From IMG/VR virus record IMGVR_UViG_3300032236_001613, positions 124,001 through 188,000 of that record: a stretch of 64,000 nt of DNA. The stretch is one strand, 5' to 3'. Position numbers and translations under genes: made by a program. The notes under the pieces were generated by a model. The model saw only the letters and a program-made list of their open reading frames with translations, was not told the DNA's origin and searched no databases. The first letter of the stretch is position 1. The number at the start of each line of letters is the position of its first letter. Below are positions 21,077 through 37,580 of this stretch, piece by piece.

Positions 21077-21109
21077 ATACTGTTATAATATTCTATAAAG
21101 GAGAATAAA

Positions 21110-21253
21110 ATGTTTACAGTTATTGTACTTTTAGTTATTGCTGGAGTATTAGTATACGTTGGAACACGTAATAAGGGATCTTCTTCGTCAGGTTCATCAT
21201 CAGGCGGTGCTAGTATGCCTGGTGTTGATAATACTAAAGAAAATAAGAATTAA
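21110..21253 (+). CDS. Small membrane protein (47 aa, absent from the ORF track)
   Basis: AAGGAG SD; extended -10 TGTTATAAT at 21081-21089; MFTVIVLLVIAGVLVYVG followed by a Ser/Gly-rich tail. Confidence 0.65.
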   Translation: MFTVIVLLVIAGVLVYVGTRNKGSSSSGSSSGGASMPGVDNTKENKN

Positions 21254-21632
21254 TGGTAGTAAACTCTTAAGTAAAGACGGTCTGGACGGGGAGTGCGACC
21301 CTCCCCCACCTCCACCATAGGTACATTTGATGCGAAAAATATTTGTAGTTGGGTTTTTAATGTTGTTGGCGGTCTTTGGTATATATAAGATTTTAAAATA
21401 TTCAGCTGACCATCCAACACAATGTAATATGTGGCACAGATGTTAAGTGTATCTATGTCGGGGGTGCGTAGTTTCGACAGAGTGTGTAATAGTCAAAGGG
21501 CTACTGGTGAGATGACTGACCTAATCAGCATAAACAAAAATAAATGCTAATGACAGTGTTTATGATGTTGCTATCGCTGCTTAATTGCAGTCTAGTAAAC
21601 AGAGTTTGATCACTCGGTAACAGAACGGTCAG
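21254..21632 (+). ncRNA. ssrA: Circularly permuted (two-piece) tmRNA: acceptor piece ending CCA at 21317, coding piece starting at 21460
   Basis: GGGGGTG (21460-21466) pairs with CACCTCC before ACCA (ends 21317), with the G3:U alanine determinant; T-arm GGGGAG-TGCGACC-CTCCCC; tag frame 21546-21584 reads ANDSVYDVAIAA-stop; the outer ends of both pieces are approximate. Confidence 0.93.
21330..21446 (+). CDS. 38-aa putative membrane peptide inside the tmRNA intervening segment
   Basis: MRKIFVVGFLMLLAVFGIYKILKYSADHPTQCNMWHRC; AGGT upstream; one transmembrane helix. Confidence 0.55.
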   Translation: MRKIFVVGFLMLLAVFGIYKILKYSADHPTQCNMWHRC

Positions 21633-21661
21633 ATAAAGGAGCTTCGGCTCCTTTATTTTTT
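21633..21661 (+). terminator. Intrinsic terminator after the tmRNA coding piece
   Basis: ATAAAGGAGC-TTCG-GCTCCTTTAT followed by a T run. Confidence 0.88.
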
Positions 21662-21699
21662 GTAATACAAATGTAATGTTTTTATAGTTAAATATTACT

Positions 21700-34744: not shown

Positions 34745-35712
34745 TGAATAAGTCAGCAGTAGTGCTAGGGGCAGGTGGATTTATTGGAAACCATTTAGTT
34801 AATAGATTAAAAAAAGAAGGATACTGGGTTAGAGGAGTAGACTTAAAATATAACGAATACCAACAAACCTCTGCTGATGAATTTATAATTGGCGATCTTA
34901 AAGATAACTCTATTGTTGAAAAGGTTATGTATAAGGAAACTCCATTTGATGAAGTATATCAACTAGCTGCAGATATGGGCGGTGCTGGCTATATTTTTAG
35001 TGGCGATAATGACGCTAATGTTATGTATAACTCAGCTCTTATAAATTTAAATGTAGTACATCATTCAACAAGATACAATGTAGGCAAAGTTTTTTATAGC
35101 AGCAGTGCATGTATGTACCCTGAACATAATCAGATCGATCCAAACAATCCAAATTGCGAGGAAAGTAGTGCTTACCCAGCAAACCCAGACAGCGAATACG
35201 GATGGGAAAAACTTTTTAGTGAGAGATTATACTTAGCATATCATAGAAACTATAAACTAAATGTAAGAATAGCAAGATTTCATAACATTTTTGGACCATA
35301 CGGTGCTTGGAATAATGGAAAAGAAAAATCGCCAGCAGCAATTTGCCGAAAGATATCTGAGGCAAAAGACGGCGGTGAAATTGAAGTATGGGGCGACGGC
35401 GAACAAACAAGAAGCTTCCTCTATATCGACGAATGCTTAGACGGTGTTCGTAAATTAATGGATAATGATTTTCTCGGTCCAGTTAACATTGGATCAGACG
35501 AAATGGTAACTATTAACAAATTAGTTAGTATTGTGTCCAACATTGCAAATAAAGAAGTAAAAATAAAACATGTGCCGGGTCCGTTAGGCGTTCGCGGAAG
35601 AAATTCCGATAATAAACTAATTAAGGAAAAATTAGGCTGGGCGCCAACACGCCCTCTAAAGGAAGGTCTTATCGAAACTTATAACTGGATCAATCAGCAA
35701 GTTAACACATAG
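34744..35712 (+). CDS. NAD-dependent epimerase, GDP-mannose 3,5-epimerase-like
   Basis: GAGGFIG, LAADMGGAGYI, SSSACMYP, YGWEK, GVRGRNSDN. Confidence 0.88.
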   Translation: MNKSAVVLGAGGFIGNHLVNRLKKEGYWVRGVDLKYNEYQQTSADEFIIGDLKDNSIVEKVMYKETPFDEVYQLAADMGGAGYIFSGDNDANVMYNSALINLNVVHHSTRYNVGKVFYSSSACMYPEHNQIDPNNPNCEESSAYPANPDSEYGWEKLFSERLYLAYHRNYKLNVRIARFHNIFGPYGAWNNGKEKSPAAICRKISEAKDGGEIEVWGDGEQTRSFLYIDECLDGVRKLMDNDFLGPVNIGSDEMVTINKLVSIVSNIANKEVKIKHVPGPLGVRGRNSDNKLIKEKLGWAPTRPLKEGLIETYNWINQQVNT

Positions 35713-35717
35713 ATAAT

Positions 35718-36137
35718 TTACTTAAACCATCCTATCTTTTCGCCAGCGGCTTTACGTCGCTGGTATTCTTCTAAGCTTCCGGGATAACGTGTAGCCCAAA
35801 TCATCCAAAAGGCCATAAATGCACTTACACCTAGTGTTAATTTCCAATTATGAGTAGTTAACCAAATAGTTACAACACTAGCATCCATGCATAAGAACAT
35901 AACCCATTTAATCTTAGTGGGGTAAACTCTGTTATTACTCCAATTTTTAATAAAAGGTCCAAATAACCTATGGTTAAGCATATAGTTATGGAACTTTTCC
36001 GAACTCTTACTAAAGCACCATGCTGCTAAAATACTAGGAGTGCTCCATGGCAATCCAGGAACAAATGTTCCTAAGTAAGCAACACCTAAAAATAGTATAC
36101 CTAAGGTAAACCAAAGAGCTTTTTTAATTTTATTCAT
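35718..36137 (-). CDS. YbaN/DUF454-family inner-membrane protein
   Basis: GVAYLGTFVPGLPWSTPSILAAWCFSKSS..FHNYMLNHRLFGPFIKNW. Confidence 0.8.
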   Translation of the reverse strand: MNKIKKALWFTLGILFLGVAYLGTFVPGLPWSTPSILAAWCFSKSSEKFHNYMLNHRLFGPFIKNWSNNRVYPTKIKWVMFLCMDASVVTIWLTTHNWKLTLGVSAFMAFWMIWATRYPGSLEEYQRRKAAGEKIGWFK

Positions 36138-36165
36138 TTTTTTTCTCGTTTGAAATATTTATTTG

Positions 36166-36195
36166 TTGACTTTACCCCACGTTATATTTTATAGT
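36166..36195 (+). promoter_or_regulatory. Sigma70-type promoter facing the ORF-free structured region
   Basis: TTGACT-18 nt-TATAGT. Confidence 0.6.
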
Positions 36196-36199
36196 ATAT

Positions 36200-36720
36200 C
36201 AACTAAGGCACACTCACTGGCATAAACATAGGCACATCAATCAACGCTTAAGCTCGCACCGGCTAATTTCGGGTGCCTATGATAACCGGACAACAAAGTC
36301 GCGGGGACAGAAATCCTGTGTGTTGACAGGAACTCAGCCACTACCCCTTCAGGGATGATGATGGAATATGCCTATATAATCCGTTTGGCTAAGATAAAAA
36401 TACTAAGGCTCTTTTGATCGCGGCTCTGTGAAAAAGATACAACCGCAAATACTACATATCTGCTAACATCGGTGTGTAGCGTTCCCGTTAGATTGAAGTT
36501 AGGAATAAGAAGTACAGGCTAACCGCTTCTGCGCAGCAATGCAATTTCCGAATGTTAGTGACCAACGAACTCAGGTAATAATCGTTAGAAAATCTTCGCC
36601 CTGTTTTGGGCGAAGTATGACATTAAAATCTAGGTAATCAATTCACTCTTAATAATTTTTCTCTTTCTTATAAAAGGTGATGAGCGCGAGCGAAATCACG
36701 GGCGAATCCTTTCGCCCCTT
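36200..36720 (+). ncRNA. Candidate large structured ncRNA (family unassigned)
   Basis: About 520 nt with no ORF, more GC-rich than its flanks, many hairpins (e.g. CATAGGCAC/GTGCCTATG, TCCTGT/ACAGGA, CTTCGCCC/GGGCGAAG). Confidence 0.5.
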
Positions 36721-36726
36721 AAATAA

Positions 36727-36755
36727 TTGACACTAATGGTAATTCCAATTATAAT
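36727..36755 (+). promoter_or_regulatory. Perfect sigma70 consensus promoter, likely leaderless transcript
   Basis: TTGACA-17 nt-TATAAT; ATG 6 nt downstream, no SD. Confidence 0.85.
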
Positions 36756-36761
36756 TACGTT

Positions 36762-37580
36762 ATGAAAATCAACATTGTCAGCGATCTACATTTAGATGTT
36801 AGCGGGTATCAAGAATTACCTGGCGGAGAAGTATTAATACTCAGCGGAGATATCGCCGAAGTACGTAATATTCACAAACACTTTCACAGCACTAAGCTTT
36901 TATCTGATGTACCTAATCATACATACGCATGTTCGGAATTCTTCCATTACGAATGTGCTAAGTACGATCGTGTGTTCTATGTAATGGGCAATCATGAGCA
37001 CTACAGAAGTACCTATCAGAATACTCGTAGAGATCTTGAGTATATGATGCCTAAAAATCTAACCATTTTAGAAAATGATGTAGTAGATTATAATGGCGTT
37101 ATGTTTATGGGTGCTACGTTATGGACTGATTTAAATCGTGGAGATCCGTTAACAGAATATCATGTTAAACAATGTATGAACGATTATCATAAGATTACTC
37201 AAAAAGGTGATGTGTACGATATGTATCATAAACTTAAACCTTCTTTTACTATGTCAGAGCATAGGCGTAGTTTAGAGTATTTTAAGATTGTGCTCGAACA
37301 GAACAAGGATCGTAAGTTTGTTATTGTAACGCATCATGCACCTAGCTTTGAAAGTGTTGACGATTATTACAAAAATGATACTCTAATGAATGGCGGATAT
37401 ATGAGTCGTTTAGAAGAGTTTATCTTAGATCGCCCTAACATCTCTATGTGGGTGCACGGGCATATGCATAACAAATCCGATTATCTAATTGGGGATACTC
37501 GTGTAGTATGCAATCCTAGAGGCTATTTGCCATACGAAAACGAAAATGGATTCGATCCAGGATTTACGGTAGAGTTATAA
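36762..37580 (+). CDS. Metallophosphoesterase
   Basis: VSDLHLD, LSGDI, MGNHEHY, VTHHAP, WVHGHMH. Confidence 0.88.
   Translation: MKINIVSDLHLDVSGYQELPGGEVLILSGDIAEVRNIHKHFHSTKLLSDVPNHTYACSEFFHYECAKYDRVFYVMGNHEHYRSTYQNTRRDLEYMMPKNLTILENDVVDYNGVMFMGATLWTDLNRGDPLTEYHVKQCMNDYHKITQKGDVYDMYHKLKPSFTMSEHRRSLEYFKIVLEQNKDRKFVIVTHHAPSFESVDDYYKNDTLMNGGYMSRLEEFILDRPNISMWVHGHMHNKSDYLIGDTRVVCNPRGYLPYENENGFDPGFTVEL

What the first reader, a model, noticed from the sequence alone, without database searches (positions are those of the whole stretch)
36166..36720. About 520-nt ORF-free, hairpin-dense locus with its own promoter: candidate new large ncRNA or replication/regulatory element
Seen: this is the largest non-coding gap in the window and is visibly more GC-rich than its flanks. 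It follows TTGACT-18-TATAGT. Stems: CATAGGCAC 36227-35 / GTGCCTATG 36273-81, competing with GCACC 36256-60 for the same strand (switch-like); TCCTGT/ACAGGA 36314-31; CTACATA/TGTGTAG; AGAAGT/GCTTCT; CTTCGCCC/GGGCGAAG 36594-615; GTGAT/ATCAC; GGGCGAA/TTCGCCC 36700-17. The last hairpin reuses the 36594 stem sequence in inverted order, so the two can swap partners. The repeats GAACTCAG (x2) and AGGTAAT (x2) also occur. I could not match it by eye to RNase P, a group I/II intron or a tRNA. Inference: a large structured phage ncRNA, or a structured origin.
Basis: partly seen in the sequence, partly recalled or inferred. Interest (0 to 1): 0.65.

Follow-up and report, generated by a model that had tools for sequence, protein, structure and literature searches.

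The report
Large structured phage RNA, known motif
The gap holds a gene for a roughly 500-base, intricately folded non-coding RNA of a jumbo phage; its first 141 bases are the catalogued 'Polynucleobacter-1' motif, but the remaining two thirds, conserved in well over a hundred T4-like phage contigs, have never been modelled, and the function is still unknown.

Summary
Window 36138-36761 is ORF-free, richer in G+C than its flanks, and lies behind a sigma-70-type promoter. It is not a wholly new RNA: 36251-36391 (+) matches Rfam RF01718, Polynucleobacter-1 RNA, at 91 bits (cut-off 37). The Rfam model covers only about a third of the conserved unit. Homology to a second copy in the same 328-kb phage genome, and to more than 120 IMG/VR contigs, runs from about 36225 to 36720. 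The unmodelled 3' part has strong covariation, including pseudoknots (94.8% standard pairs against 76% in shuffles, 0/500). G-U pairs outnumber A-C 5:1, so the + strand is the RNA. In about 90% of loci the RNA directly follows a conserved 141-aa GIY-YIG nuclease gene. That gene sits in a syntenic T4-like block (Mre11-like, Rad50-like, small basic protein, GIY-YIG, RNA, then convergent baseplate genes). The window copy is an orphan paralogue with its own promoter and terminal hairpin. An origin, a mobile homing cassette and a decayed gene are disfavoured. Function is unknown; the best guess is a compactly folded trans-acting RNA made early in infection, possibly tied to the nuclease.

The parts
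36166..36195 (+). Sigma-70-type promoter TTGACT-18-TATAGT of the RNA gene; predicted start near 36202-36204
   Evidence: 10/12 matches. Both hexamers are conserved and the spacer varies in L003, L006 and L009. Transcription itself is not shown.
36203..36722 (+). Predicted transcript of the full-length RNA (conserved core about 36225-36720)
   Evidence: Homology to copy B of the same genome (74% column identity). nhmmer gives 354.6 bits over profile positions 8-536. Conservation drops after the terminal hairpin. z = -2.7. G-U+U-G 1212 against A-C+C-A 234 in the helices.
36251..36391 (+). 5' domain = Rfam RF01718 Polynucleobacter-1 RNA, full model 1-141
   Evidence: cmscan 91.2 bits, gathering score 37, E 8e-20. 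Helices 36256-60/36272-76, 36335-40/36386-91 and 36360-65/36380-85 pair in 97-99% of cells with compensatory changes.
36241..36324 (+). Leader-to-loop pairing 36241-45 with 36320-24 (loop of the third Rfam hairpin); it lies partly outside the Rfam model
   Evidence: 91% standard pairs against 75% in shuffles and 21-58% when slid; covariation score 0.55 against 0.24; no shuffle of 500 reached the observed percentage paired or score, though the counts of covarying pairs and pair types were within shuffle range.
36450..36482 (+). Long hairpin (about 10-13 bp) whose loop 36463-36469 forms pseudoknot 1
   Evidence: All pairs show 5-6 pair types. Helices 1 and 2 pair in 95.7% and 92.1% of cells, with 9 of 10 pairs changed on both sides.
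36552..36558 (+). 3' strand of pseudoknot 1, pairing with loop 36463-36469
   Evidence: 97.6% paired, 6 of 6 pairs with changes on both sides (helix 3). No shuffle of 500 reached the observed percentage paired, double-change cell count or covariation score. Copy A has CUAACAU/AUGUUAG, copy B CUAGCG/CGCUAG.
36487..36491 (+). 5' strand of pseudoknot 2, pairing with 36519-36523 in the loop of hairpin 36509-36529
   Evidence: 98.6-99% paired, 3 of 5 pairs compensatory, 0/500 shuffles (helix 4).
36502..36550 (+). Helix (window register about 36502-05 with 36546-49) enclosing hairpin 36509-12/36526-29 and an optional GNRA hairpin 36533-41; it holds the near-invariant GGUAC...ACCGCC block
   Evidence: helix 5 pairs in 83%, helix 6 in 100%; 6 of 8 pairs compensatory. 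Invariant columns are listed.
36567..36638 (+). Two conserved repeat blocks (ACUCAGRUAAU at 36569-79, AUCUAGRUAAU at 36628-38) flanking hairpin 36594-601/36608-15
   Evidence: Conservation profile. The hairpin pairs in 97% of cells with 4 compensatory pairs. Pairing between the two blocks was predicted but cannot be tested because they do not vary.
36677..36699 (+). Hairpin with conserved GA / GC-GNRA-GC / GAA interior (tandem G-A type internal loop plus GNRA tetraloop)
   Evidence: The loop is GNRA in most sequences; the flanks are GAGC in 83/104 and GCGAA in 57/104. The outer stem covaries (0/500), though it is poorly aligned.
36700..36719 (+). Terminal hairpin, probable intrinsic terminator and 3' end of the RNA
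   Evidence: 8 bp, all with compensatory changes, 96% paired. Conservation ends here. A new promoter follows at 36727. The U tract is weak, so termination is inferred.
36727..36755 (+). Boundary: perfect TTGACA-17-TATAAT promoter of the next gene (metallophosphoesterase, 36762-37580)
   Evidence: 12/12. Pfam Metallophos and phrog_1649.
35718..36137 (-). Boundary: divergent DUF454 membrane-protein gene
   Evidence: Pfam PF04304, E 2.6e-27.

Best explanation
Window 36166-36722 is a self-contained gene for a non-coding RNA of about 500 nt on the + strand. It is the full-length form of the RNA that Rfam lists, in truncated form, as Polynucleobacter-1 (RF01718). The RNA has two parts. The 5' domain (36241-36391) is the Rfam motif plus a leader-to-loop pairing. 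The 3' domain (36392-36720) is not modelled in Rfam; it is built around two loop pseudoknots, an invariant GGUAC...ACCGCC hairpin, two AGAUAAU-type repeat blocks, a GNRA hairpin and a terminal hairpin. In T4-like phages the canonical copy lies at the end of the Mre11-like / Rad50-like / GIY-YIG operon. The window copy is a second, orphan paralogue that has lost the nuclease gene and is driven by its own host-type promoter. Shown: family membership, extent, structure, strand, synteny and copy number. Inferred: it is transcribed early by host RNA polymerase, ends at the 36700-36719 hairpin, folds into a compact tertiary structure and acts in trans as an RNA. Whether it works with, or on, the neighbouring GIY-YIG nuclease is a guess, at about 0.2. 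The confidence figure refers to the identity and anatomy, not to the biochemical role.
For: Rfam match of 91.2 bits. A second copy in the same genome is aligned over about 500 nt. The 3'-domain pattern occurs in 120 or more viral contigs, and 143 of 144 pattern matches (viral loci plus 9 MAG contigs) are confirmed by nhmmer, nearly all spanning both domains. Covariation of the 3' extension: 69 pairs, 91.3% standard against 78.4% in shuffles and about 41% when slid, 0/500. With the official pair counter on an unfitted MAFFT alignment: 94.8% against 76.3%, 24 of 29 pairs compensatory, both pseudoknots at 97% or more. G-U exceeds A-C 5:1. The promoter hexamers are conserved in the copy-A lineage. 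Other loci also carry the RNA without the nuclease gene, and one (L091) has a TATAAT box just upstream of the RNA, so the RNA can be an autonomous gene. The locus is syntenic, and RNA identity tracks that of the Rad50-like gene, r = 0.59.
Against: There is no expression data: no RNA run was listed for this phage. The 5' and 3' ends are predicted, not mapped. The U tract after the terminal hairpin is weak. Several helices in length-variable parts could not be scored on MAFFT alignments. Nothing tested here says what the RNA binds or does.
Confidence: 0.85

Rival explanations
1. The RNA is the partner of the GIY-YIG protein: a specificity, scaffold or inhibitor subunit of an EndoII-like nuclease that acts together with the Mre11/Rad50-like exonuclease. 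It would be an RNA-dependent or RNA-regulated nuclease.
For: Linkage is tight in both directions. 111 of 122 RNA loci have the 141-aa GIY-YIG ORF ending within a few bases of the RNA. 62 of 70 protein-ascertained loci have the RNA. The protein is a catalytic domain only, with no DNA-binding domain. It is more conserved (74%) than the Rad50-like neighbour (65%). The genome with the orphan RNA also carries one complete pair. The RNA begins at or inside the ORF's 3' end, as omega-RNAs of TnpB do (established knowledge).
Against: 8 of 70 close orthologues (about 70% identity) have another ORF abutting and no RNA. Homologues in 413 GenBank phage records, of which three were checked (Melnitz-3, phiN3, P-HM1), showed no RNA. 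RNA-less and RNA-linked proteins show no distinguishing insertion. RNA identity does not track GIY-YIG identity, r = 0.04. No hypervariable guide-like segment matched the phage's own genome. Shared synteny alone explains the adjacency.
Confidence: 0.2
2. It is a cis-acting 3'-untranslated element of the early/middle operon. It would act as a stabiliser against 3' exonucleases, or as a terminator or insulator at the point where rightward replication genes meet leftward baseplate genes.
For: The canonical position is the 3' end of a transcription unit facing convergent genes. The RNA ends in a covarying hairpin. Matches to the T4 late promoter consensus are enriched just downstream: 58/103 loci against 57/399 background segments.
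Against: About 500 nt with three covarying long-range pairings and near-invariant single-stranded blocks is far more than a terminator or stabiliser needs. The window copy and other orphan copies follow no gene of the same strand, and the window copy has its own promoter.
Confidence: 0.12
3. The GIY-YIG gene is a free-standing homing endonuclease, and the RNA gene is merely its conserved landing site, or part of a mobile cassette, as segB sits among T4 tRNA genes.
For: The Pfam family is SegE_GIY-YIG and PHROG neighbours are homing endonucleases. Some RNA copies lack the ORF.
Against: The flanks are the same in most of 104 loci (Mre11-like, Rad50-like, small basic protein upstream; baseplate hub downstream), so the pair is not moving. 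The ORF is present in about 90% of loci and is better conserved than core genes. It lacks any DNA-binding domain. There is one copy per genome.
Confidence: 0.05
4. It is a replication origin or another DNA-level structured element.
For: It is an intergenic, hairpin-rich region next to a promoter. T4 origins use promoter-derived R-loops (established knowledge).
Against: Pairs are kept through G-U but not A-C (1212 against 234), which is a signature of RNA on the + strand. Loop pseudoknots covary. There are no iterons or tandem repeats among the features seen. The GC-skew change at 35600-36600 coincides with the minus-strand DUF454 gene.
Confidence: 0.03

Closest known systems
Polynucleobacter-1 RNA motif (Rfam RF01718; Weinberg et al. 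2010, PMC2864571)
   Same: Window 36251-36391 matches the whole 141-position model at 91 bits. The gene association is the same: the authors noted most examples lie downstream of GOS11034 genes resembling PSSM2_218 of cyanophage P-SSM2 and suspected phage origin. Here that gene is identified as a SegE-type GIY-YIG domain protein.
   Different: The published motif is 141 nt and typed as an sRNA. The conserved unit here is about 500 nt, with a 3' domain containing two pseudoknots and a leader pairing that are not in the model. The same 3' blocks are visible in the unaligned flanks of the 2010 seed sequences, including Polynucleobacter NC_009379.1. The authors found no example in a purified phage; here it lies in a 92%-complete 328-kb virus record and in other jumbo-phage records of 262-355 kb. 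The window copy lacks the upstream gene. Some relatives keep the 3' domain but do not match RF01718 at all.
GOLLD and ROOL, large ornate phage- and prophage-associated RNAs of unknown function
   Same: Size class (hundreds of nt), many conserved helices and pseudoknots, GNRA loops, residence in phage genomes, and no known function. They are the nearest analogy in kind.
   Different: There is no sequence or structure match: no Rfam hit even at E up to 10. GOLLD and ROOL usually neighbour tRNA genes, whereas this RNA neighbours a GIY-YIG gene. Whether this RNA self-assembles is untested.
Omega-RNA / reRNA of TnpB and IscB (HEARO)
   Same: A structured RNA encoded immediately next to, and starting at the 3' end of, a small nuclease gene.
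   Different: The nuclease fold is different (GIY-YIG, not RuvC/HNH). There are no transposon ends, no variable guide segment was found, there is no HEARO match, and the locus is syntenic rather than mobile. This is an analogy only.
T4 segB among tRNA genes, and T4 endonuclease II (denA)
   Same: These are small GIY-YIG enzymes of T4-type phages, one sitting beside stable-RNA genes and the other acting with gp46/47 in host DNA breakdown. The gene here sits right behind the gp47/gp46-like pair.
   Different: There is no detectable sequence match to a solved EndoII chain (phmmer, E up to 1). The closest solved fold is the I-TevI catalytic domain. The ORF is fixed rather than sporadic.

Membership tests
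Rfam RF01718 Polynucleobacter-1 RNA | Covariance-model score at or above the curated gathering score (37 bits) over the full model | tested here: met
   91.2 bits, model positions 1-141 of 141, E 8e-20, + strand, window 36251-36391. The second genomic copy scores 87.5 bits.
Rfam RF01718 Polynucleobacter-1 RNA | The consensus helices of the model are formed | tested here: met
   The cmscan alignment marks three non-standard pairs. Across 104 homologues the first hairpin, the outer helix 36335-40/36386-91 and the inner hairpin 36360-65/36380-85 pair in 97-99% of cells. The third hairpin is length-variable and poorly aligned by MAFFT, at 65%.
Rfam RF01718 Polynucleobacter-1 RNA | Position downstream of a GOS11034 / PSSM2_218-like gene (stated as 'most' examples, not all) | tested here: not met
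   The window copy follows a divergent DUF454 gene and its own promoter. Copy B of the same genome and 111/122 homologous loci do follow the GIY-YIG gene. The feature is typical, not obligatory.
GOLLD / ROOL / HEARO / OLE / raiA large RNAs | Match to the family covariance model | tested here: not met
   There was no such hit on 35700-37200 at E up to 10 with permissive filters, nor at gathering score on the whole window.
RNase P RNA, group I intron, group II intron, tmRNA, tRNA | Match to the family model or ARAGORN call within 36166-36720 | tested here: not met
   The flanking ORFs are also unrelated genes, not a split gene.
Free-standing homing-endonuclease cassette | Sporadic presence and variable genomic context | tested here: not met
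   The neighbours are conserved in most of 104 loci. The ORF is present in 91% of loci and is more conserved than the Rad50-like gene.
RNA-guided nuclease system (TnpB/IscB-like logic) | A variable guide segment matching a target | tested here: inconclusive
   The variable segments of both copies gave only matches of 14 nt or less, at chance level, in the phage's own genome. Host or competitor genomes could not be searched.

The most novel reading that the evidence does not exclude
'Polynucleobacter-1' is really a new class of large (about 450-520 nt), multi-pseudoknotted phage RNA, comparable in rank to GOLLD or ROOL. It would be fixed in a large clade of T4-like freshwater phages, with the conserved 3' domain rather than the Rfam motif as its core. 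It would work as the RNA subunit, regulator or specificity factor of the adjacent domain-only GIY-YIG nuclease during host-DNA breakdown or recombination. No RNA partnered with a GIY-YIG enzyme is known. The first half (a large undescribed architecture) is essentially shown here. The probability given is for the nuclease partnership.
Probability: 0.18. Interest if true: 0.9.

Novelty: new variant of a known kind. Interest (0 to 1): 0.55.

Why it matters
Large bacterial and phage RNAs with complex conserved folds are rare, and most of those understood turned out to be ribozymes, ribonucleoprotein cores or self-assembling cages. This one has been in Rfam since 2010 as a 141-nt 'sRNA' of unknown role. 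Here it is shown to be about 3.5 times longer, to contain at least three covarying long-range pairings, to be carried by T4-like and jumbo phages, and to sit in a fixed position behind the recombination-nuclease genes and a highly conserved GIY-YIG protein. That turns an orphan motif into a testable object. It gives the right construct boundaries for structure determination, a candidate protein partner, and a phage stage (early, host-type promoter). The Rfam model should be rebuilt, because some relatives with the 3' domain are invisible to it.

Tried and rejected
- GenBank phages: blastn of copy A and of a canonical locus (L007) against 50,697 records gave no match, so no cultured phage in that set carries the RNA at that sensitivity. 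The three homologous GIY-YIG loci checked (Melnitz-3, phiN3, P-HM1) have no RF01718 match.
- Expression: no RNA run was listed for the locus.
- Literature: searches for an extended or renamed version of the motif found only the 2010 paper.
- Guide hypothesis: the variable segments of both copies have only chance-level matches in the phage's own genome.
- Alternative inner hairpin 36516-18/36523-25: invariant, so untestable, and it competes with the supported pseudoknot 2.
- Hairpins 36423-26/36446-49 and 36564-68/36581-85: plausible by eye, with compensatory changes between copies A and B, but they could not be scored because MAFFT misaligns these length-variable parts.
- Antisense protein: an ORF of 61-88 aa inside the RNA region is open in only 36 of 104 loci and in neither copy of this genome, so it was rejected as a gene.
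- Structure-aware alignment: mafft-qinsi is not installed. Kin of a virus record cannot be drawn by the genome search.
- RNA-less GIY-YIG loci: the RNA was sought elsewhere in their contigs, but these are fragments of 19% completeness or less, so the result is inconclusive.
- GIY-YIG model: Foldseek gave only weak E-values; I-TevI is the one meaningful match (probability 0.98).

Full report
**1. What is at the coordinates**

The window is bases 124001-188000 of a 328,068-bp IMG/VR virus record, estimated 92% complete, so it is a jumbo phage.

- Between the minus-strand gene 35718-36137 (DUF454) and the plus-strand gene 36762-37580 (calcineurin-type metallophosphoesterase) there is no ORF of 60 aa or more.
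- The gap is 624 nt. This equals the 623-nt gap at 21077-21699, which holds a tmRNA.
- G+C reaches 0.443 at 36200-36599 against 0.32-0.39 around it.
- The scan finds TTGACT-18-TATAGT at 36166-36195. It also finds a perfect TTGACA-17-TATAAT at 36727-36755 that serves the next gene.
- The predicted 520-nt transcript folds at -141.7 kcal/mol. This is better than all 100 dinucleotide shuffles, z = -2.7.

**2. Part of it is a known family**

cmscan against Rfam 15 gives RF01718, Polynucleobacter-1 RNA, at 36251-36391 on the + strand.

- The score is 91.2 bits against a gathering score of 37, and the whole model (1-141) is matched.
- No other family reaches even E = 10 in a meaningful way. In particular there is no RNase P, intron, GOLLD, ROOL or HEARO hit, and ARAGORN finds nothing.
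- The family was described by Weinberg et al. 2010 from freshwater and estuary metagenomes and one Polynucleobacter genome.
- Their supplement says the examples mostly lie downstream of GOS11034 genes that resemble PSSM2_218 of cyanophage P-SSM2. It also says the 3' half is not always detected and that no purified phage had one.
- A full-text search finds no later paper on it.

**3. The conserved unit is about 3.5 times longer than the Rfam model**

- The same genome has a second copy at G000:C1:299783-300319.
- Aligned with the window copy, homology runs from about 36225 to 36720. There are compensatory differences, for example CTTCGCCC/GGGCGAAG against CTTACCCA/TGGGTAAG.
- A profile of 17 sequences then matched 143 of the 144 pattern matches in these loci, almost always over both the 5' and 3' parts.
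- Conservation stops right after the hairpin at 36700-36719.
- The raw 2010 alignment file shows the same 3' blocks in the unaligned flanks of the seed sequences, including Polynucleobacter NC_009379.1. The extension was therefore present but never modelled.
- Conversely, five contigs and one complete 346,856-bp phage keep the 3' domain but have no RF01718 match. The 3' domain is at least as defining as the catalogued motif.

**4. The structure is under selection as RNA on the + strand**

The analysis used 104 non-redundant homologues aligned with MAFFT and projected on the window.

| Test | Observed | Shuffled | Slid | Shuffles reaching observed |
|---|---|---|---|---|
| 69 predicted pairs beyond 36392, % standard pairs | 91.3% | 78.4% | about 41% | 0/500 |
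| Same 69 pairs, covariation score | 0.398 | 0.160 | about 0.09 | 0/500 |
| 29 core pairs, 28-sequence unfitted alignment, pair counter | 94.8% | 76.3% | 25-50% | 0/500 on all five measures |

In the 28-sequence test, 24 of the 29 pairs changed on both sides.

Three long-range pairings are supported:
- The loop 36463-69 pairs with 36552-58: 97.6% paired, 6 of 6 pairs compensatory.
- 36487-91 pairs with the loop 36519-23: 98.6-99% paired.
- The leader 36241-45 pairs with the loop 36320-24: 91% against 75% in shuffles.

Other features:
- A hairpin at 36677-99 has a conserved GA / GC-GNRA-GC / GAA interior.
- The terminal hairpin 36700-19 has compensatory changes at all 8 pairs.
- G-U pairs outnumber A-C 1212 to 234. 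This fixes the transcribed strand and argues against a DNA-level element.

- The stem 36227-35/36273-81 is no better than shuffles.
- The likeness between the 36594 and 36700 hairpins is peculiar to the copy-A lineage.

**5. Genomic setting**

- In 111 of 122 RNA loci with enough upstream sequence, a 141-aa ORF ends within a few bases of the RNA on the same strand.
- The ORF is PF19835, SegE-type GIY-YIG, E 1e-32, and is a catalytic domain only.
- Its AlphaFold model (pLDDT 89.5) is closest to the I-TevI catalytic domain and carries a lysine-rich beta-hairpin insertion.
- The GIY and YIG tyrosines and several further positions, including two Glu and an Asn, are invariant; their catalytic roles are assigned by eye against I-TevI, not tested.
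- Starting from the protein instead, at least 597 viral contigs encode a close relative. Of the best 70 with room downstream, 62 have the RNA and 8 have another ORF abutting.
- The neighbourhood is syntenic, not mobile: Mre11-like (gp47-type), Rad50-like (gp46-type), a small Hc1-like basic protein, GIY-YIG, RNA, a slot of variable unknown genes, then convergent baseplate-hub genes.
- The GIY-YIG protein (median 74% identity) is better conserved than the Rad50-like protein (65%) and the baseplate hub (36%). RNA identity tracks the Rad50-like gene with r = 0.59.
- More distant GIY-YIG homologues occur in 413 GenBank phage records (T4-like cyanophages, Methylophilales phage Melnitz, Sinorhizobium phiM12 relatives), often mislabelled 'NAD synthetase'. 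The three such loci checked (Melnitz-3, phiN3, P-HM1) have no RNA.

**6. The window copy**

- It is the non-canonical one. It has no GIY-YIG gene upstream, different neighbours shared only with three related contigs, and its own promoter.
- The promoter hexamers are conserved while the spacer drifts.
- Two other complete 345-355-kb phages have a single, canonical copy. The window's genome has two RNAs and one GIY-YIG gene.
- Other contigs also carry the RNA without the ORF; one of them (L091) has a TATAAT box just upstream of the RNA.
- Within the copy-A lineage, substitutions keep the pairing, so this copy looks functional.

**7. How it most likely works**

Shown: a conserved, strand-specific, multi-pseudoknot RNA gene.

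Inferred: it is transcribed early from a host-type promoter. In canonical loci it would instead come from the end of the recombination-nuclease operon, and enriched matches to the T4 late promoter consensus then start the next unit. It ends at the terminal hairpin, folds compactly (GNRA loops, pseudoknots) and acts in trans.

The adjacency to a domain-only GIY-YIG nuclease placed right behind gp47/gp46-like genes suggests a role in the same pathway, possibly as partner or regulator. Several results go against this:
- RNA-less orthologues exist.
- The linked proteins have no distinguishing feature.
- RNA and protein divergence do not correlate.
- No guide-like match was found.

I put the partnership at about 0.2. 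The other rivals are a purely cis 3'-end element at about 0.1, a homing cassette at about 0.05 and an origin at about 0.03. No expression data could be obtained.

**8. Verdict**

The finding is real and the 'large phage ncRNA' reading is right, but the locus belongs to an already catalogued family. What is new is the anatomy: the catalogued motif is the 5' third of an RNA of about 500 nt whose 3' domain, pseudoknots, phage residence, syntenic position and protein neighbour are documented here.

Noticed in passing
window 21211-21658 (+): A phage-borne tmRNA: RF04321 tmRNA_permuted at 120 bits and RF01850 beta_tmRNA at 89 bits. It lies in a 623-nt gap as large as the one studied. ARAGORN does not call it. 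The betaproteobacterial type hints at the host.
   Followed up: no
G000:C1:299391-300319 (= L002 1059-1987), outside the window: This is the canonical copy of the module in the same genome: a 141-aa GIY-YIG ORF directly followed by the second RNA copy (87.5 bits to RF01718). It lies behind a Rad50-like gene fragment and two small ORFs.
   Followed up: yes
L030, L031, L073, L080, L132; L195 2111-2351: A sub-type of the RNA keeps the 3' double-pseudoknot domain and the GNRA and terminal hairpins, but its 5' part gives no RF01718 match. It follows a divergent GIY-YIG ORF. The Rfam model therefore misses part of the family.
   Followed up: partly
GenBank phage records, e.g. L149 2498-2938 (Melnitz), L150 2501-2917 (phiN3), L151 2420-2905 (P-HM1): Homologues of the GIY-YIG protein (35-52% identity; 'T4-like GC 213' in the P-HM1 record) are widely annotated as 'NAD synthetase'. 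Pfam and the fold say GIY-YIG nuclease, so this is probably a propagated misannotation.
   Followed up: partly
loci, about 490-600 nt after the RNA start: Directly after the RNA's terminal hairpin lies a slot of variable, family-less genes (clusters 7, 11, 14, 17, 26). Sequences within one mismatch of the T4 late promoter consensus TATAAATA are enriched between the hairpin and this slot (58/103 loci against 57/399 background segments).
   Followed up: partly
window 36727-36755: A perfect consensus sigma-70 promoter (TTGACA-17-TATAAT, 12/12) lies in front of the metallophosphoesterase gene 36762-37580. This is unusual strength for a phage gene and implies early expression by unmodified host polymerase.
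   Followed up: no
L140 12-85: A group II intron domain 5-6 match (RF00029, 50.5 bits) lies about 3 kb upstream of an RF01718 copy on a Methylococcales MAG contig. It is probably unrelated to the RNA.
   Followed up: no
RNA region, minus strand (about 114-420 nt after the RNA start in 36 of 104 loci): A 61-88-aa antisense ORF recurs inside the RNA region. It is closed by stops in the other 68 loci and in both copies of this genome. It is most likely a by-product of nucleotide conservation.
   Followed up: partly
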